Shown here: piece by piece, positions 21,179-37,273 of the stretch | Numbering within the stretch: the stretch's first letter is position 1 | How the letters are laid out: each line of letters starts with the position of its first letter | Virus record (IMG/VR): IMGVR_UViG_3300031576_000002 | Coordinates: 124,001 to 188,000 of that record | DNA: 64,000 bases | Reading direction: 5' to 3' (one strand) | Notes under the pieces: model-generated | The model's database searches: none | Told to the model about the DNA's origin: nothing | The model's input: the letters and a program-made list of their open reading frames with translations, nothing else | Position numbers and translations under genes: made by a program

Positions 21179-21802
21179 CTACGGCCCCAAAAGACGAATT
21201 GCTCTTCTGAGGTAGCCTGCTTGTACCGGCCCGTGCTCGCAATCATTCAGGCTCGGCCGCAAGCGGTGGTAGTAGTTCATGCGAATGGCCCAGTCCATCA
21301 CACTCTTGACTCTGGACGGCTCAGGCGACTCGCCAGGATCTCCCGTGCAGATGTAGCCTTGCAGATTGTCCTCGACGTCAAACACCTTGATTCCGTGCCC
21401 GCCCTCCCAGACAAGCCGGTGCCCGGTCTTCGGATCCTCGTCCTCGATGAGCGGCTCGACTTTGCCGTACTCACCCACGTTCGCGGGATCCGTTTCATCC
21501 CACCAGTGCGCGAGCAGATGCTTCAACCGCGACTCTCGCCGGTGAGGCCGAATCCTTGAAGTCGTGTCCATGTAGCCAAGCCTCCGGTAGTCGAACCCTG
21601 GCAGAATAGCAATCTTCTGCTCCGGGAAATATCCACGCCTTTCCGTTACCGCGGACTGCCCCACGACCTCCGTAAACAGCGCTGGCAGCGCGGCAGGAGG
21701 AACCGTCGCAGCATGCCGGTTGTAGGCTGCGACTTCTCCACGCCCTGAGAAATCAAAGGATCCGGCTAGATGTGCAAGGATGTCATGCACGCCGTTTATC
21801 AT
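21179..21802 (-). CDS. C-terminal half of HNH-split phage protein (..VHDILAH..F..RGE..A..H..TEVVGQ)
   Basis: Matches, from memory, the FR[AG]VHDxxGH...GE...H...TETxGQ motif of phage proteins; its ATG lies inside the HNH 3' end. Confidence 0.7.
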   Translation of the reverse strand: MINGVHDILAHLAGSFDFSGRGEVAAYNRHAATVPPAALPALFTEVVGQSAVTERRGYFPEQKIAILPGFDYRRLGYMDTTSRIRPHRRESRLKHLLAHWWDETDPANVGEYGKVEPLIEDEDPKTGHRLVWEGGHGIKVFDVEDNLQGYICTGDPGESPEPSRVKSVMDWAIRMNYYHRLRPSLNDCEHGPVQAGYLRRAIRLLGP

Positions 21803-22316
21803 GAGGGCAGTAACCGTACAAACCGAGACTCATATTGCAATTACAGCACAAAACCCGGTAACCCTCCGGATAGCCCTCTATTCTAAGCTCGTGAAATATC
21901 TCGCCCCTGTACCGAGATTTAGCTCTATGCTGCCCACCCCCTCCACGGACGTGATCTAAGCACAAAAATTCGAGTAGCTCTTCCCCGCAGCATGCGCAGG
22001 CAGGGTGATCCAGCTTGCTGTAATGGCATAGAGCTTCGTAGCGCTTGCTTCGCCGCCACTGCTTCAAATAAATTCGTCTCCTCTCCCGGAAAACAGGATC
22101 CTTTCCCCGTCGCCTGCTGTACTCTCGGAACTTCTCGGGACTAGCTTTGAAATACTCACGCGCCTGCCCCAAGACCTTCGCTCGAAACTCGGGCTCTTCG
22201 TGATACCGTTTGCGCTTGGCGGCAAGCATGCACGCCTTGCACTTCCCGTAGGTACGGTAAAATTCTCTGCGTAGCTTAGCCGTCCCGCACCGATTACATA
22301 TCTTTAGAGTGTCCAT
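21783..22316 (-). CDS. HNH endonuclease inserted within a gene
   Basis: ICNRCG..CKAC; CACCGE..LCLDHV..GG..YRVLCCNCN. Confidence 0.85.
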   Translation of the reverse strand: MDTLKICNRCGTAKLRREFYRTYGKCKACMLAAKRKRYHEEPEFRAKVLGQAREYFKASPEKFREYSRRRGKDPVFRERRRIYLKQWRRSKRYEALCHYSKLDHPACACCGEELLEFLCLDHVRGGGGQHRAKSRYRGEIFHELRIEGYPEGYRVLCCNCNMSLGLYGYCPHDKRRA

Positions 22317-22695
22317 GCACGTAGCATAACATGAAAATACCCCGAAAGTGAAGGTTCTGATCTTGGGTAAAGAAAGGGTGCTCCGGACCTCCGGTGAATA
22401 CCTTGAGCCGGTTGTTCTGCGTTACGTCCTCGACCATCTCCTCCGCATTGGCGTAAGGATTCTCGTCCACATACTCCACTTCAAACTTAGAAGTAATCCT
22501 GCGGAAAAGCTTGTCAAGATGAGCTACGAGTGCTTGGTAGGACGGCACCGCAGACGCATCGTGAGCAGGCGCTTTCTCGTAAGCAGTAGCAACGGCTTCG
22601 AGGTATTCATCCCAGTCCACTGGCATCAACTTGGCCAAACGCTCAAGTAACTGCGCGTTTTTCTCTGGCGCAGGTGTATAGTAGTCAGCATGCAT
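22294..22695 (-). CDS. N-terminal half of the split protein; start codon supplied by the element end
   Basis: NPYANAEEMVEDV..N.LKVF.GG.EHPFF..QNLHFRG; ATG 22695 lies inside the inverted repeat; original start probably ATG 23940. Confidence 0.7.
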   Translation of the reverse strand: MHADYYTPAPEKNAQLLERLAKLMPVDWDEYLEAVATAYEKAPAHDASAVPSYQALVAHLDKLFRRITSKFEVEYVDENPYANAEEMVEDVTQNNRLKVFTGGPEHPFFTQDQNLHFRGIFMLCYVHGHSKDM

Positions 22696-23914
22696 GACTG
22701 CTTAAGCCGCCACTTGCATAGCAGGTAAGCAGCCTTCTCGTTTCACAGAGGAACTTACAAGCGTATCCTCTCCACGAAGGGATAGCAGAGCCCGGTTTAA
22801 GACGTTTTTAGCCGCGTTGACATCTCTATCAAGGACCAAGCCACAAGCAGAGCAGATATGGACTCTTTCACTCAAACTCTTCTTCACAGTCATTCCACAT
22901 CCGCTGCACTCTTGGCTGGTGCCTCTGGGATTGACTTTTACCACTATCCTACCAGCTTCTTCCGCTTTGTAGGACAGCATGTGGAGCAACATCCCCATTC
23001 CAACATCTTTGAAGCTACGCCTGAATCCACGGCTGAGACCCTGGCTCATACCTTTCAGGTTCAAGTCTTCCACCGCAATCAGATCATACTCTTTGACCAA
23101 AGACTTAGACACTCCATCAAGAATATGCTTCCGAGTTCTTGTAACTTTCTGCCAAGCCTTAGCCAGTACCTTGACGGCTTTCCTTCTACGCTTAGATCCC
23201 TTCTGTCTCCTGGATACCGTTCTTTGAGCATGCTTGAGCTTCTTCTCGTTCTTGGCGTAAACACGTTGCCGCTCAATCAAGATGCCGTCTGAGGTAGCGA
23301 CTAGAGCTTGCATGCCTAGATCAATGCCAATGACTTTGCCAGTCTTGAGAAGAGGAGCTGGAAGCGGTAGCTCACAGGATAAGACGGCGTACCAGCCGTC
23401 AGCTTCTCTTTTGACTGTGACCTCTTTAACCTTGGCATCAGGCGGAAGCTCCCGATAAGGATTCCAGCGGAAGTGTCCCAGCTTGGAAAGATGTAGCTTT
23501 TTGCTGTCAAACTTGAAACCTGACTGATTGTATGTGAAGGAGTCGTACCGATCCCTACTCTTGAATCTGGGAAAGCCTGGCTTCTCTCCACGCTTGACTC
23601 TTCTGAAGAAAGCCTTGTACGTTTTGTCCAGTTTTTGAAGGACTGGGTGAAGAACTCTTGAATAGATCGTGTCATAGCCTTCTACCTGCTTTGAAACATA
23701 CTTAAGCTCTAGGCACTGATCGTAGAAGCTGAGAGTTCTATTATGCTGCTTCCACTCCAGGATTCGTTGTTCCAAAGCACAGTTGTAGAGGAAGCGGCAG
23801 AAATCCAGAAGCCGCTGGAGATTGATCTCCTGGGCCTTGGTAGGTTGGAGGCGGAACTTGTAGGAACGGCGCACGGCTAGAGTGTATCACAAGGGAGTTA
23901 AGGAATCACGCATG
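22689..23914 (-). mobile_element. tnpB-only cassette with terminal inverted repeats and 10-bp TSD (copy 1, 1226 bp)
   Basis: TIRs CATGCGTGATTCCTTAA / CATGCATGACTGCTTAA (14/17); flanks TAGTAGTCAG (22679-22688) and TAGTAGTTAG (23915-23924). Confidence 0.88.
22702..23874 (-). CDS. tnpB: RNA-guided endonuclease TnpB (390 aa)
   Basis: YKFRLQPT HTH; GIDLG, AVEDL, DRDVNAAKN RuvC residues intact; CSGCG/CSACG zinc finger. Confidence 0.95.
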   Translation of the reverse strand: MRRSYKFRLQPTKAQEINLQRLLDFCRFLYNCALEQRILEWKQHNRTLSFYDQCLELKYVSKQVEGYDTIYSRVLHPVLQKLDKTYKAFFRRVKRGEKPGFPRFKSRDRYDSFTYNQSGFKFDSKKLHLSKLGHFRWNPYRELPPDAKVKEVTVKREADGWYAVLSCELPLPAPLLKTGKVIGIDLGMQALVATSDGILIERQRVYAKNEKKLKHAQRTVSRRQKGSKRRRKAVKVLAKAWQKVTRTRKHILDGVSKSLVKEYDLIAVEDLNLKGMSQGLSRGFRRSFKDVGMGMLLHMLSYKAEEAGRIVVKVNPRGTSQECSGCGMTVKKSLSERVHICSACGLVLDRDVNAAKNVLNRALLSLRGEDTLVSSSVKREGCLPAMQVAA

Positions 23915-23938
23915 TAGTAGTTAGTGAAGGGCTCGGCC

Positions 23939-24406
23939 ATGAGTCAACCAGTAAAAAAAATCTCACACCGCTTCACTTGGAGCGACATCATCCGGGAGTC
24001 GGCATGGGCACAGTGGATTCGTATGACTCGGCCGCCAGGCTCGCGAATAACGCATACTCCGTGGGGGTGCATCCTCTCCGACATTCCTTCTGCCCAGCAG
24101 AAAATTGAAGCTCGAAAACTGCGCCGGGCTTACGAGTCTTGGATCGCCCAGGATGAAGAGCGTGCTCGTGACGCAGAGTTGTTCCGATTCTGGACCGCCG
24201 TGTTCCCTCCGCATCGCTTGCTCGTAGAGGTCACCGAAGCTTACGCGGCCGGCTTGCCGTACAAGAATATCCTCCGCGAGTACCGGCTACGGTTCAAAGT
24301 TCAGCCTCTCGGCTGGGCAAAGTGGGAAGCATTTGTTCGAGATCCGGAATCCGGCGGCGGAGTTCTCGTTCCATTCCGGGGTAGCCAAGAAGGAACGTCA
24401 CGATAG
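23939..24406 (+). CDS. Hypothetical protein (rare plus-strand gene)
   Basis: About 155 aa with protein-like composition; overlaps the minus-strand neighbour, so uncertain. Confidence 0.4.
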   Translation: MSQPVKKISHRFTWSDIIRESAWAQWIRMTRPPGSRITHTPWGCILSDIPSAQQKIEARKLRRAYESWIAQDEERARDAELFRFWTAVFPPHRLLVEVTEAYAAGLPYKNILREYRLRFKVQPLGWAKWEAFVRDPESGGGVLVPFRGSQEGTSR

Positions 24407-25499
24407 CGTCTGGACTCTGAAGTACCACGTCTCTCCAAGAGAGCGGGTACTTGGAGTAGGTGAGCTTGATCCCCAGCTCTTCAAAGTTCAATCCAAGCGC
24501 TGGACCGAATTTACGAAACCGGGAAGGAAACTTTCCTATCTCCTCTTCAGGGATGTGCCCTTTGACGTCAAAAGCGAGCGATACGATCACTTCGCTATCC
24601 CTGAGACGGTACATGCCCACGGGTCCGCCAGAGGGCTTGAAAATGATGGATTCTTGATCGAACCAGTTTCCCAGCTCCACCGCATCACGCCACTCCACCC
24701 CTTCTACTAGAATCGACCGCTCCCGCTCAGCGTAGAATCCGTAGACTGGCGTCCAGGAGTACCCTCGACGTTCAAGCTCTGAAGTCAACTCTCCGTGGCG
24801 ACGCCGGTTCTCGGCCCTCGACCTGTTTTCCTTTTCAGTGCGCTCCTCGATCTCCCGATCCCGCCAACGGATCCTCTCCGGTCGCGGAGAGGTCTGAAAC
24901 TCCTTCTCTCGGTCACGCTGTCTCTCCCACTGTTCCGGTACCTTTGGATCGAACTTCACGGCTCTGGGGTCGGGGCGGTAAGCAGACAGAACCGTGTAGG
25001 CTGCGCCCGGCCGCTGAAGGTACTCCAGATCCGTCACGCTAATCCCCAGCAAAGCTATCGCCCGTCCGAGAATGCCGGCCTGCACCTTGGGCACGTTAGA
25101 CCGCCATCCCGATCCGGGCGGCTTCTCGCGCGGATCTTTGCTGACAACCATCTCCTCCCAGAATTCCCTTACGCCAGGGCCTAGCAGTTGCCGCATCGGT
25201 CGCACGGCTTCCATGGGAACGGTTGGATAGATGCCGTCCCCACCAAGCTGACCGCTGAGAAGATCAACTTCGACTCCACCCGGCAATAGATTCCAGTTGT
25301 GGACTTGCCCGTCTGGGAGACGGCCATAGGCGATCTTGCCGCCTAGCTCTTGCTGCACGGCAAAGGCCACAGCAAGCGAATCCTTGGCCGTCGCTCCTTG
25401 GCTGTGAACGAGGCGCTGTACCTCTTGAAGTAGCGGCACAAAGTCGGCTGGAACTTCTCGCCCCTGCCCCAGCAGACTCAGAGCCCTGGCAAGAATCAT
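24294..25499 (-). CDS. YunG-like plus DUF3293-like fusion protein
   Basis: LAVAFAVQQELGG..HNWN.LP.G.EVDL..Q (YunG-like); VLSAY..ENRRRHGEL..L..GY...E.SILV..A.ELG..F.QESI (DUF3293-like). Confidence 0.65.
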   Translation of the reverse strand: MILARALSLLGQGREVPADFVPLLQEVQRLVHSQGATAKDSLAVAFAVQQELGGKIAYGRLPDGQVHNWNLLPGGVEVDLLSGQLGGDGIYPTVPMEAVRPMRQLLGPGVREFWEEMVVSKDPREKPPGSGWRSNVPKVQAGILGRAIALLGISVTDLEYLQRPGAAYTVLSAYRPDPRAVKFDPKVPEQWERQRDREKEFQTSPRPERIRWRDREIEERTEKENRSRAENRRRHGELTSELERRGYSWTPVYGFYAERERSILVEGVEWRDAVELGNWFDQESIIFKPSGGPVGMYRLRDSEVIVSLAFDVKGHIPEEEIGKFPSRFRKFGPALGLNFEELGIKLTYSKYPLSWRDVVLQSPDAIVTFLLGYPGMERELRRRIPDLEQMLPTLPSREAEL

Positions 25500-25521
25500 C
25501 ACGTCTCCCGAAAAGCCACGC

Positions 25522-25902
25522 TCAAGGCACAGGTAGGTAAGCCTTGGCCGCACTGACCAGGAGTACGCCAAAGGTCTGGCCTACCTTGCCGAGCAGCGCG
25601 TTCAGCTTCTCGCGGTCGCAGTTGCCCCGCTGAAGCGTCGCCAGGTCCGCCTTGGAGATCTCGATCCTGGCCTCGGGAGTCAGATTCTTCATGAGCAGGT
25701 CACGGGCTTCCTGGCTCATCTTGGCGCCGCGAATGGCGTGAACGATGTCAAACCAGATGTCCTGCGCGAACGCCTTGAGAAGATCCCGGATCTCAGGATC
25801 TTCAAGCATGCCCCCGATCTCGTCTTTGATCGTGTCCCGAAACCCGAGATCGTTGAGCAGAACGCCGAGCGTGCCCTTGATGTTGTCAAGCGAGTTAGCC
25901 AT
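25522..25902 (-). CDS. Hypothetical helical protein
   Basis: 126 aa with high codon bias; coupled to neighbours. Confidence 0.65.
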   Translation of the reverse strand: MANSLDNIKGTLGVLLNDLGFRDTIKDEIGGMLEDPEIRDLLKAFAQDIWFDIVHAIRGAKMSQEARDLLMKNLTPEARIEISKADLATLQRGNCDREKLNALLGKVGQTFGVLLVSAAKAYLPVP

Positions 25903-36047: not shown

Positions 36048-37273
36048 CATGCGTGACTCCTTAAGCCCTCTGTGCTACCATCCAGCCATGCGGCGTTCCT
36101 ACAAGTTCCGGCTTCAACCGACCAAGGCTCAGGAGATCAATCTCCAGAGGCTCCTGGACTACTGCCGCTTTCTCTACAACTGCGCTTTGGAGCAGCGTAT
36201 TACAGAATACAAACAGCATAAGAGGACTCTCAGCTACTACGATCAAGCCTTAGAACTTAAGCACGTATCCAAGCAGGTAGAAGGCTACGACACAGTCTAC
36301 GCCAAAGTCTTGCAGGTTGTCCTTCAAAAACTGGATCTAGCTTACAAGGCTTTCTTCAGAAGGATCAAGCGTGGAGAGAAGCCGGGCTTTCCACGGTTCA
36401 AGAGTAGGGATCGGTACGACTCCTTTACCTACAACCAGTCTGGTTTCAAGTTTGACAGTCAAAGGCTGCATCTTTCCAAGCTGGGCCATTTCCGCTGGAA
36501 TCCTTATCGACAACTTCCACCAGACGATAAGGTCAAAGAGGTCACAGTCAAAAGAGAAGCCGACGGTTGGTACGCAGTCTTATCCTGTGAGCTACCCCTT
36601 CCAGAACCTCTTCCCGCGACTGGAAAGGTCGTTGGTATTGATCTAGGCATGCAAGCTCTAGTTGCTACCTCAGATGGAATCGTAATTGAACGCCAACGTG
36701 TCTACGCCAAGAATGAGAAGAAGCTCAAGCATGCTCAGAGAACGGTTTCCAGAAGAAAGAAAGGCTCTAACCGTAGAAGAAAAGCAGTCAAGGTATTGGC
36801 TAAGGCTTGGCAGAAAGCTACAAGAACTCGGAAGCATATTCTTGATGGAGTGTCTAAGCAGTTGGTACAGAACTATGATCTGATTGCGGTTGAAGACCTG
36901 AACCTGAAAGGGATGAGTCAAGGGCTCAACCGTGGATTCAGGCGTAGCTTCAAGGATGTCGGAATGGGGATGTTGCTTCACATGCTGTCCTACAAAGCGG
37001 AAGAAGCTGGTAGGATAGTGGTGAAAGTAGATCCCAGAGGAACCAGCCAGGAATGTAGTGGATGCGGAGCAACTGTGAAGAAGAGTTTGAAAGAAAGAGT
37101 TCATAACTGCTCTGCTTGTGGCTTGGTCCTTGATAGAGATGTCAACGCGGCTAAAAACGTCTTAAGCAGGGCTCTGCTATCCCTTCGTGGAGAGGATACG
37201 CTTGTAAGTTCCTCTGTGAAGCGAGAAGATTTCTTAAGTGCTGCTCAGGCAGCGGCTTAAGCAATCACGCATG
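36048..37273 (+). mobile_element. tnpB-only cassette with terminal inverted repeats and 10-bp TSD (copy 2, 1226 bp)
   Basis: TIRs CATGCGTGACTCCTTAAGCC / CATGCGTGATTGCTTAAGCC (18/20); flanks CCCGTCGAGC (36038-36047) and CCCGTCGAAT (37274-37283). Confidence 0.9.
36088..37260 (+). CDS. tnpB: RNA-guided endonuclease TnpB (390 aa), close paralog of 22702-23874
   Basis: Same length and motifs as copy 1; stop TAA lies inside the right TIR. Confidence 0.95.
   Translation: MRRSYKFRLQPTKAQEINLQRLLDYCRFLYNCALEQRITEYKQHKRTLSYYDQALELKHVSKQVEGYDTVYAKVLQVVLQKLDLAYKAFFRRIKRGEKPGFPRFKSRDRYDSFTYNQSGFKFDSQRLHLSKLGHFRWNPYRQLPPDDKVKEVTVKREADGWYAVLSCELPLPEPLPATGKVVGIDLGMQALVATSDGIVIERQRVYAKNEKKLKHAQRTVSRRKKGSNRRRKAVKVLAKAWQKATRTRKHILDGVSKQLVQNYDLIAVEDLNLKGMSQGLNRGFRRSFKDVGMGMLLHMLSYKAEEAGRIVVKVDPRGTSQECSGCGATVKKSLKERVHNCSACGLVLDRDVNAAKNVLSRALLSLRGEDTLVSSSVKREDFLSAAQAAA

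What the first reader, a model, noticed from the sequence alone, without database searches (positions are those of the whole stretch)
22679..23940. Cassette copy 1 interrupts a gene near codon 9 and its TIR donates a new in-frame start codon
Seen: removing 22689-23914 plus one TSD joins ATG 23940 (MAEPFTNY) in frame to YTPAPEKNAQ... With the element present, the right TIR (CATGCATG) supplies ATG 22695, giving MHADYYTPAPE, directly after the tnpB stop. Inference: the insertion is near-neutral because the TIR restarts the damaged gene. The restored frame independently supports the TSD boundaries.
Basis: partly seen in the sequence, partly recalled or inferred. Interest (0 to 1): 0.7.

Follow-up and report, generated by a model that had tools for sequence, protein, structure and literature searches.

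The report
Transposon splits phage gene; restart codon
A small TnpB-carrying transposon landed in the first few codons of a phage gene of unknown function, and a point mutation in this copy's end created a new in-frame start codon; a neat but fairly ordinary case, with no evidence yet that the new start is used.

Summary
Window 22689-23914 is a 1226-bp TnpB-only element with 20-bp inverted ends and a 10-bp target duplication (9/10 identical). It is one of three copies in a 205-kb cave-metagenome phage. Removing it plus one duplication joins ATG 23940 in frame to the 133-codon ORF that now starts at ATG 22695.

The interpretation needs three corrections.
1. ATG 22695 is not a built-in feature of the inverted repeat. 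Five of six termini read CAC(G/A)CATG. Only this end reads CATGCATG, through a copy-specific change at 22694. The built-in terminal ATG (22691-22689) is out of frame here.
2. The same gene (phrog_3170 family) is also split inside its invariant FRAVHD motif by an HNH endonuclease ORF (21783-22316). "Near-neutral" is therefore untested.
3. No close homolog exists, so the MAEPF test cannot be run. Homolog leaders vary in sequence, but their lengths (median 20.5, maximum 30) fit a start at 22695 or 23940 and not the internal Met.

The stub ORF, tnpB and the restarted ORF share one reading frame, and the new ATG lies 6 nt after the tnpB stop. Co-transcription and translational coupling are therefore plausible, but there are no expression data. 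The case is moderately interesting.

The parts
22689..23914 (-). TnpB-only element, copy 1 (1226 bp), bounded by 20-bp inverted ends
   Evidence: Three copies in the genome are 85-86% identical and align without gaps over 1226 bp. Similarity ends at these bases.
22679..22688 (.). Target-site duplication, copy next to the right end (tnpB 3' side): TAGTAGTCAG
   Evidence: Matches 23915-23924 at 9 of 10 positions. Chance is about 8e-5.
23915..23924 (.). Target-site duplication, copy next to the left end: TAGTAGTTAG
   Evidence: The C/T mismatch decides Asp versus Asn at codon 7 of the reconstruction.
22702..23874 (-). tnpB, 390 codons, GTG start (ATG in the other two copies)
   Evidence: Pfam HTH_OrfB_IS605, OrfB_IS605 and Cas12f1-like_TNB; phrog_506. 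dN/dS between copies is 0.10-0.14 and all three copies are intact.
22689..22708 (.). Right inverted end, CATGCATGACTGCTTAAGCC on the + strand. It contains the tnpB stop and both ATGs.
   Evidence: It matches the left end at 15 of 20 positions; the other copies match at 17-18 of 20.
23895..23914 (.). Left inverted end (reverse complement CATGCGTGATTCCTTAACTC)
22693..22695 (-). In-frame ATG that opens the present 133-codon ORF. Its middle base (22694) is a copy-1-specific transition from the consensus ACG.
   Evidence: Three-copy alignment position 1221 is specific to copy 1. Sample contigs agree.
22689..22691 (-). Terminal outward-facing ATG common to all six element ends. Here it is out of frame (+1) and stops after 21 codons.
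   Evidence: It is in frame with the downstream ORF at copies 2 and 3.
22696..22734 (-). RNA hairpin at the tnpB 3' end. Its 3' arm holds the UAA stop and ends one base before the AUG.
   Evidence: about -21 kcal/mol in all three copies. In copies 2 and 3 an outer 3-bp stem pairs the ACG triplet. In copy 1 the AUG is unpaired.
23887..23940 (-). Orphaned 5' stub of the interrupted gene: ATG 23940, 17 codons (MAEPFTNYY plus 8 element-encoded), TGA. It is in the tnpB frame, 4 codons before the tnpB GTG.
22294..22695 (-). Piece 1 of the phrog_3170-family gene (133 codons). It ends ...NLHFRG plus a 14-residue foreign tail.
   Evidence: phrog_3170 profile positions 114-207. 649 homologs found. Family HMM E = 8e-44.
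21783..22316 (-). HNH / endonuclease-VII-like ORF (177 codons) that splits the gene inside the FRAVHD motif. It overlaps piece 1 by 23 nt and piece 2 by 20 nt and lies in a different frame.
   Evidence: PHROG endonuclease VII and HNH hits at E about 2e-7. Junctions. No intron RNA family found.
21179..21802 (-). Piece 2 of the same gene (207 codons): MIN plus GVHDILAHL..., followed by a unique C-terminal extension.
   Evidence: phrog_3170 profile positions 201-272. Alignment with uninterrupted homologs.
23939..24406 (+). Divergent 155-codon gene. Its ATG overlaps the ancestral ATG 23940. The element now lies 24 nt upstream of it.
   Evidence: Coding potential is like that of neighbouring genes. 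No Pfam or PHROG hit.

Best explanation
What is shown. A non-autonomous, TnpB-only element with 20-bp inverted ends inserted by a staggered cut (8-10 bp duplication) into codons 6-9 of a phage gene of the phrog_3170 family. This separated the native start (ATG 23940) from the body of the gene. The present ORF starts at ATG 22695 inside the element's right end. That codon exists only in this copy, because one transition (22694) turned the consensus ACG into ATG. The stub, tnpB and the gene body share one reading frame. The new ATG lies 6 nt after the tnpB stop, at the foot of a hairpin, and no terminator follows.

What is inferred. The gene body is transcribed together with tnpB. It is translated by termination-reinitiation, or by direct initiation, at ATG 22695. 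The product differs from the original only in the first residues (MHA for MAEPFT) of a poorly conserved leader. The mutation may have been selected after insertion, but chance is not excluded.

What remains unknown. An HNH endonuclease cassette also splits the same gene within its invariant motif. Whether the two-piece protein still works is not known.
For: - Element boundaries, inverted ends and duplications.
- In-frame reconstruction.
- Frames and distances.
- Copy-specific origin of the ATG: the other five termini read CAC(G/A)CATG, and alignment position 1221 is specific to copy 1.
- Junctions and the ATG confirmed in contigs of two runs.
- Family membership and uninterrupted homologs.
- Leader length before the conserved Trp in 46 stand-alone homologs: median 20.5, range 1-30, only 1 of 46 at 6 or fewer. 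The window has 27 (current) or 30 (reconstructed), against 4 if Met24 were the start.
- No terminator-like site on the minus strand between tnpB and the ORF.
- In copy 1 the AUG is unpaired. The equivalent ACG is paired in copies 2 and 3.
- The N-terminal helix of the family model has low confidence, so it is weakly constrained.
Against: - There is no RNA, ribosome or protein evidence. Only DNA runs hold the sequence.
- Any site has about a 7.5% chance of a copy-1-specific change (92 of 1226). The ATG could therefore be a chance transition, at roughly 3-5% for this base.
- Shine-Dalgarno pairing before ATG 22695 is unremarkable (-4.8 kcal/mol against a gene median of -3.0).
- If the right end serves as the 3' part of a TnpB guide RNA, bound TnpB could occlude the start codon.
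- The HNH split may already have inactivated the gene, which would make the restart irrelevant.
- The ancestral ATG overlaps the start of a divergent gene and has no recognisable ribosome-binding site.
Confidence: 0.55

Rival explanations
1. The gene is a decaying, dispensable target. It has been hit twice, by the HNH cassette and by the TnpB element. It no longer makes a working protein, and ATG 22695 is a fortuitous transition in a drifting repeat. The insertion is neutral because the gene does not matter, not because it is restarted.
For: - The gene is split within a helix that carries invariant residues: Arg in piece 1 and His-Asp...His in piece 2.
- Piece 1 carries a 14-residue foreign tail.
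- Copy-1-specific changes are enriched in the last 53 nt (10 observed against about 4 expected). This could reflect relaxed constraint.
- The chance probability of the ATG is a few percent, which is not negligible.
Against: - Both pieces are open and keep all family-invariant residues.
- Both pieces have coding statistics as good as neighbouring genes.
- Phage genes split by free-standing endonuclease genes can remain functional as two polypeptides. This is general knowledge and was not tested here.
Confidence: 0.22
2. The native start is downstream (TTG Leu20 or Leu23, or ATG Met24). The element then sits in the short intergenic region between two divergent genes, and both ATG 23940 and ATG 22695 are irrelevant upstream codons.
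For: - The family profile aligns only from residue 21.
- ATG 23940 has no ribosome-binding site, overlaps the divergent gene's ATG, and lies just after a terminator-like hairpin plus T8.
- Copies 2 and 3 lie at gene boundaries without removing a start codon.
- An in-frame ATG within 8 codons arises by chance in about 8% of placements.
Against: - A start at Met24 would leave 4 residues before the conserved Trp. Only 1 of 46 homologs has 6 or fewer, and the mode is 25-27.
- Pairwise alignments to several homologs reach query residues 8-15.
- Residues 11-23 resemble the amphipathic leader helix of the closest homolog.
Confidence: 0.12
3. One reading: the inverted repeat inherently carries an outward start codon, so insertion into the 5' end of a gene is buffered from the moment of insertion.
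For: - All six termini end in an outward-facing ATG (palindromic CATG).
- At copies 2 and 3 that terminal ATG is in frame with the downstream ORF.
Against: - At copy 1 the built-in terminal ATG is out of frame and dead-ends after 21 codons.
- The in-frame ATG is absent from the consensus.
- At copies 2 and 3 the downstream genes keep their own start codons, so the terminal ATG is not needed there.
Confidence: 0.08

Closest known systems
IS1341-type (TnpB-only) members of the IS200/IS605 family
   Same: A compact element of about 1.2 kb that encodes only a TnpB. The protein has HTH, RuvC-like OrfB_IS605 and zinc-finger TNB domains. There is a hairpin at the 3' end.
   Different: IS200/IS605 elements have no terminal inverted repeats, make no target duplication and insert next to a fixed 4-5-nt motif (PMC13565253). 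This element has 20-bp inverted ends, 8-10-bp duplications and unrelated flanks. No Y1 transposase is present in the record.
Fanzor-only non-autonomous TIR/TSD transposons of eukaryotic viruses, for example the two-copy element of Spodoptera frugiperda ascovirus 1a (PMC10711439)
   Same: A TnpB-family nuclease is the only gene. The element has clear inverted ends and short target duplications, occurs in several copies within one viral genome, and its partner transposase is unknown.
   Different: Those are eukaryotic Fanzor1 proteins in viruses of insects. This is a 390-residue prokaryotic TnpB in a phage. Guide-RNA architecture was not established here.
Rare prokaryotic TnpB genes inside DDE-type IS elements (ISL2, IS630, IS1031) bounded by inverted repeats, as summarised in PMC13565253
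   Same: TnpB sits between terminal inverted repeats, outside the IS605 and IS607 mechanisms.
   Different: Those elements are described as carrying their own DDE transposase. To my knowledge those IS groups make 2-3-bp duplications. This element carries no transposase and makes 8-10-bp duplications. No rve, DDE_Tnp_1 or Mutator-type transposase is present in the phage record.
Phage genes split by free-standing homing endonuclease genes, i.e. intronless homing in T4-like phages (PMC13565253 section 3.2; split nrdA and mobE from my own knowledge)
   Same: An HNH-type ORF is inserted in a highly conserved motif. The two halves become separate ORFs with overlapping stops and starts, and the insert supplies the second half's ATG.
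   Different: The host gene here has unknown function. Homing activity and reassembly of the halves were not tested.
IS elements that supply outward promoters or start signals to adjacent genes (general knowledge: IS10 pOUT, IS1, IS2 and ISAba1 hybrid promoters)
   Same: A mobile-element end provides expression signals to the flanking gene.
   Different: Here it is a start codon rather than a promoter hexamer. It arose by a point mutation in one copy, and its use is unproven.

Membership tests
IS200/IS605 family (IS1341-type, TnpB only) | Encodes TnpB (RuvC-like OrfB_IS605 plus zinc-finger TNB domain) | tested here: met
   Pfam E = 4e-24, 2e-23 and 1e-12. phrog_506 E = 3e-106.
IS200/IS605 family (IS1341-type, TnpB only) | No terminal inverted repeats | tested here: not met
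   20-bp inverted ends match at 15-18 of 20 positions in each of the three copies.
IS200/IS605 family (IS1341-type, TnpB only) | No target-site duplication; insertion 3' of a fixed tetra- or pentanucleotide | tested here: not met
   Flanking direct repeats of 9/10, 8/10 and 9/10 with different sequences at the three sites. Chance is 8e-5 to 7e-4 for each.
IS200/IS605 family (IS1341-type, TnpB only) | Mobilised by a Y1 (HUH) TnpA | tested here: inconclusive
   No Y1_Tnp match in the 205-kb record. The record is 85% complete and the host genome is unknown.
Cut-and-paste (DDE-type) non-autonomous element | Terminal inverted repeats plus a target duplication of roughly fixed length | tested here: met
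Cut-and-paste (DDE-type) non-autonomous element | A cognate transposase gene bounded by the same inverted repeats exists somewhere | tested here: inconclusive
   There are no further repeat copies in the genome and no rve, DDE_Tnp_1 or Transposase_mut. The repeat pattern found nothing in viral contigs. In the genome collection it found only about as many matches as I estimate chance would give, none next to a tnpB.
phrog_3170 protein family (the interrupted gene) | Profile match and family-invariant residues (Y, PY, H, N..FR.VHD...H, F...GE..YN, E...Q, QK, GF) | tested here: met
   Pieces 1 and 2 match consecutive parts of the profile. Family HMM E = 8e-44. Invariant residues are present across the two pieces.
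phrog_3170 protein family (the interrupted gene) | One continuous ORF | tested here: not met
   The gene is split by the HNH ORF between FR(G) and VHD, and its first codons are detached by the TnpB element.
Free-standing homing-endonuclease split gene | HNH-type endonuclease ORF within a conserved motif; not an intein (out of frame) and not a recognisable intron | tested here: met
   PHROG endonuclease VII and HNH hits at E about 2e-7. Different frame and overlapping stops and starts. No Rfam intron family found.
Free-standing homing-endonuclease split gene | Endonuclease cleaves the uninterrupted allele and the halves reassemble | not testable with these tools
   The complex prediction gave no answer.
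Translational restart supplied by a mobile-element end | In-frame start codon inside the element end, open to the gene body | tested here: met
   ATG 22695 lies two codons after the tnpB TAA.
Translational restart supplied by a mobile-element end | The start codon is actually used | not testable with these tools
   Only DNA runs hold the sequence.

The most novel reading that the evidence does not exclude
This phage carries a lineage of TnpB-only elements that move by a TIR/TSD (cut-and-paste-like) route not described for prokaryotic TnpB-only elements. Their palindromic CATG termini act as outward start codons, so insertions at gene boundaries are tolerated. All three copies now offer an in-frame element-borne ATG to the downstream ORF. 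Copy 1, whose built-in ATG fell out of frame, was rescued by a selected point mutation that also freed the codon from an RNA stem.
Probability: 0.15. Interest if true: 0.6.

Novelty: new variant of a known kind. Interest (0 to 1): 0.42.

Why it matters
If the restart is real, it shows how a compact phage genome can absorb a transposon inside a coding region. The element's own gene provides transcription and ribosome delivery, and a single base change in its end provides the start codon.

The element itself may matter more. It is a prokaryotic TnpB-only unit with inverted ends and 8-10-bp target duplications, present three times in one phage and under strong purifying selection. This departs from the IS200/IS605 and IS607 mechanisms and resembles the Fanzor-carrying elements of eukaryotic viruses.

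The interrupted gene belongs to a widespread phage family with no solved or recognisable fold.

Tried and rejected
- **Close homologs to read the native N-terminus.** None were found in viral contigs, in the 5.8-billion-protein set searched with piece 2 or piece 1, or among 1.84 billion representatives (best 49% identity).
- **Empty-site allele in the source sample.** Not seen. Contigs carry both junctions, but contigs drop rare variants.
- **More copies, to fix the repeat consensus.** The repeat pattern gave 0 hits in viral contigs. It gave 68 hits in genomes, which I estimate is about the chance expectation for 17 specified bases, and none lies next to a tnpB.
- **Inverted ends in the nearest TnpB relatives.** The relatives at 40-54% identity, also in phage-like contexts, show no comparable inverted ends.
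- **Group I intron or intein as the explanation of the HNH insert.** Rejected. There is no Rfam match, the frame differs, and the ORF fills the insert.
- **Shine-Dalgarno strength.** Uninformative, because this phage uses weak sites in general.
- **Promoter and terminator scan.** At chance level.
- **Function of the interrupted family.** The AlphaFold model is good (pLDDT 86). There is no PDB match by Foldseek or VIA-align, and only uncharacterised AlphaFold DB clusters match.
- **Assembly of the two gene pieces.** The prediction returned "no answer". It is not evidence either way.
Full report
**Context**

The window is bases 124001-188000 of a 205,227-bp IMG/VR phage record, estimated 85% complete. 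Near-identical sequence is held by two DNA runs of one cave-metagenome sample.

**The element**

- tnpB lies on the minus strand at 22702-23874 (390 codons). It carries the HTH_OrfB_IS605, OrfB_IS605 and Cas12f1-like TNB domains.
- A search of the whole genome finds three copies at 85-86% nucleotide identity. Matches begin and end at window 22689 and 23914.
- The three copies align without a single gap over exactly 1226 bp. dN/dS is 0.10-0.14 and dS is 0.45-0.60, so all three TnpB genes are intact and under purifying selection.
- Each copy has 20-bp inverted ends with consensus CATGCGTGAYnnCTTAAGCC, matching at 15-18 of 20 positions.
- Each copy is flanked by a direct repeat that differs between sites:
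  - copy 1: CTAACTACTA / CTGACTACTA
  - copy 2: CCCGTCGAGC / CCCGTCGAAT
  - copy 3: GGTGGAGCGG / GGTGGAGCGA (tnpB orientation)
- Around random 1226-bp segments of this genome, 9/10 matches occur at 8e-5 and 8/10 matches at 7e-4. These are therefore real target-site duplications of 8-10 bp.
- This combination does not fit IS200/IS605 or IS607, which have neither inverted ends nor duplications (PMC13565253, PMC6188088).
- No Y1, rve, DDE_Tnp_1 or Mutator-type transposase is present in the record, and there are no further copies of the repeat. The element is non-autonomous and its partner is unknown.

**The observation**

- On the minus strand the upstream flank reads TGA CTC ATG GCC GAG CCC TTC ACT AAC TAC TA | element.
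- The downstream flank reads element | CTGACTACTA TACACC....
- Removing the element and one duplication (1236 nt, 412 codons) gives one ORF, MAEPFT(N/D)YYTPAPEKNAQ..., directly after an in-frame TGA.
- With the element in place there are two ORFs in the gene's frame:
  - a 17-codon stub (23940-23887) that ends at a TGA in the left end;
  - a 133-codon ORF (22695-22294) that starts MHADYYTPAPE.
- The stub, tnpB and the 133-codon ORF all share one frame. The spacings are stub stop, 4 codons, tnpB GTG ... tnpB TAA, 2 codons, ATG 22695.
- Contigs of two runs from the source sample cross the right-end junction without differences, and one run's contig crosses the left-end junction.

**Where the ATG comes from**

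- In tnpB orientation the right ends read:
  - copy 1: ...GCAGTCATGCATG
  - copy 2: ...GCAATCACGCATG
  - copy 3: ...GCGGTCACGCATG
- The three left ends, read outward, give ...TCACGCATG...TCACGCATG and ...TCACACATG.
- The consensus codon at the position of ATG 22695 is therefore ACG. The ATG results from one copy-1-specific transition (window 22694, alignment position 1221).
- All six ends do carry a terminal outward ATG, from the palindromic CATG. At copy 1 it (22691-22689) is in the +1 frame and stops after 21 codons.
- The statement "the TIR donates the start" should therefore read "a point mutation in this copy's TIR created the start".
- 92 of 1226 sites carry copy-1-specific changes. The chance of this particular change is therefore a few percent, which is suggestive of selection but not proof.
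- Two further details point the same way without being decisive:
  - In copies 2 and 3 the ACG triplet pairs in an outer 3-bp stem of a conserved 3' hairpin. Copy 1 has changes on both sides of that stem, and its AUG is unpaired at the foot of the hairpin.
  - Copy-1-specific changes are enriched in the last 53 nt, with 10 observed against about 4 expected.

**The interrupted gene**

- The 133-codon ORF matches phrog_3170 at profile positions 114-207. The 207-codon ORF at 21802-21179 matches positions 201-272.
- An exhaustive search gives 649 homologs. Many are stand-alone proteins of about 200-260 residues, and others are domains of very large proteins.
- Aligned with uninterrupted homologs, piece 1 ends ...NLHFRG and piece 2 begins MIN-GVHDILAHL. 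The break therefore lies inside the family's invariant FRAVHD...H motif.
- Between the pieces lies a 177-codon ORF (22316-21783) with endonuclease VII and HNH PHROG hits.
  - It is in another frame and overlaps both neighbours by about 20 nt.
  - No intron RNA family is detected.
  - This is the pattern of a free-standing homing endonuclease gene that has split its target. Its end supplies piece 2's start codon.
- The gene is thus broken by two unrelated mobile elements.
- Both pieces keep the invariant residues and have normal coding statistics. Whether they assemble is unknown, because the complex prediction gave no answer.
- The family has a confident AlphaFold model (pLDDT 86). It has no match in the PDB and matches only uncharacterised AlphaFold DB clusters. 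Its function is unknown.

**Was ATG 23940 the native start?**

- No close relative exists. The best hit to piece 1 is 49% identical. The hits to piece 2 reach 41-66% identity, but only over the shared domain. Searches found nothing closer. The MAEPF test is therefore impossible.
- Homolog leaders are unrelated in sequence, and the family profile aligns only from residue 21.
- Leader length is informative. Among 46 stand-alone homologs the number of residues before the conserved Trp has a median of 20.5 and a range of 1-30, and only one homolog has 6 or fewer. The window has 27 with ATG 22695 and 30 with ATG 23940. It would have 4 if Met24 were the start.
- No in-frame start codon lies between the junction and Leu20.
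- This favours a start upstream of the insertion point, where ATG 23940 is the only candidate.
- Caveats:
  - ATG 23940 overlaps the ATG (23939) of a divergent 155-codon gene that has good coding potential.
  - It lacks a ribosome-binding site.
  - It follows a terminator-like hairpin plus T8, a class of match that occurs at chance level in this region.

**Likely mechanism (inferred)**

- No terminator separates tnpB from the ORF.
- The left end carries a conserved TGnTAYAnn motif 6-7 nt before the tnpB start, which could be an extended -10 element for a leaderless transcript.
- Transcripts from the element, or read-through from upstream, would therefore cover stub, tnpB, piece 1, the HNH ORF and piece 2.
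- Ribosomes finishing tnpB at UAA would have melted the hairpin and could reinitiate 6 nt downstream.
- The product would differ from the original by MHA in place of MAEPFT, within a leader that is variable and modelled with low confidence.
- None of this is measured.

**The other copies**

- Copy 3 sits exactly on an ATGA stop/start overlap. The duplication leaves the upstream gene with two extra residues and leaves the downstream gene with its own ATG.
- Copy 2 removes about 4 codons from the end of one gene. It lies 18 codons upstream of the likely start of a P-loop ATPase gene.
- At both copies the terminal ATG is in frame with the downstream ORF.
- All three copies are thus at gene boundaries. 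This fits purifying selection on insertion sites in a dense genome. Only copy 1 detaches a start codon.

**Verdict**

- As a gene-restart story it is a plausible, unproven instance of a known kind of event.
- The element's TIR/TSD architecture for a prokaryotic TnpB-only unit in a phage is the less ordinary part. Its closest described parallels are Fanzor-only elements in eukaryotic viruses (PMC10711439) and rare DDE-associated TnpBs (PMC13565253).

Noticed in passing
window 21783-22316 (minus), with 22294-22695 and 21179-21802: The same phrog_3170-family gene is split a second time, inside its invariant FRAVHD motif. The splitter is a 177-codon HNH / endonuclease-VII-like ORF whose ends overlap both halves and supply piece 2's ATG. 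Piece 1's foreign tail (..YVHGH..) and the HNH start region (GTGCATGGACAC) resemble the target sequence GTGCATGACATC.
   Followed up: partly
window 36048-37273 (copy 2) and genome 2734-3959 (copy 3; L003:1501-2726): Both other copies lie at gene boundaries. Copy 3 sits on an ATGA stop/start overlap. Copy 2 lies about 4 codons before a gene's stop and 18 codons upstream of a P-loop ATPase start. In both, the element's terminal outward ATG is in frame with the downstream ORF.
   Followed up: partly
window 23939-24406 (+): A lone plus-strand 155-codon gene with good coding potential and no Pfam or PHROG hit. Its ATG overlaps the ancestral minus-strand ATG within CCATGA. The element now lies 24 nt upstream of it, and the insertion broke up a TATAGT hexamer (22677-22682) that would have sat about 20 nt before its ATG.
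   Followed up: no
window 23875-23914 and the equivalent left ends of copies 2 and 3: A conserved TGnTAYAnn motif (extended -10-like) lies 6-7 nt before the tnpB start codon, suggesting a leaderless tnpB transcript. Copy 1 has GTG where copies 2 and 3 have ATG.
   Followed up: no
window 22696-22734 (minus) and equivalents: A conserved hairpin of about -21 kcal/mol covers the tnpB stop codon at the right end. A few compensatory pairs occur among the three copies. It may be the 3' stem of a TnpB guide RNA or a transposase-recognition hairpin.
   Followed up: partly
phrog_3170 family (P0002 and about 650 homologs): A widespread family in phages and very large multidomain proteins. Its invariant residues are Y, PY, H, N..FR.VHD...H, GE, E...Q and QK. 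The predicted fold is confident but matches no solved structure. Homologs occur in cluster C mycobacteriophages and in Rhodococcus phage E3, where the protein is annotated as a structural protein.
   Followed up: partly
window 24294-25571 (minus): A 425-codon ORF with weak DUF3293, S-adenosylmethionine-lyase-family and YunG Pfam matches. It is possibly an anti-restriction-type enzyme fusion. Its 3' end overlaps the plus-strand gene convergently by about 110 nt.
   Followed up: no
window 22954-23251: The source-sample contigs include short, more divergent tnpB fragments (about 8% different) at roughly twice the phage's depth. These probably represent the other element copies collapsed together, or further relatives in the community.
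   Followed up: no
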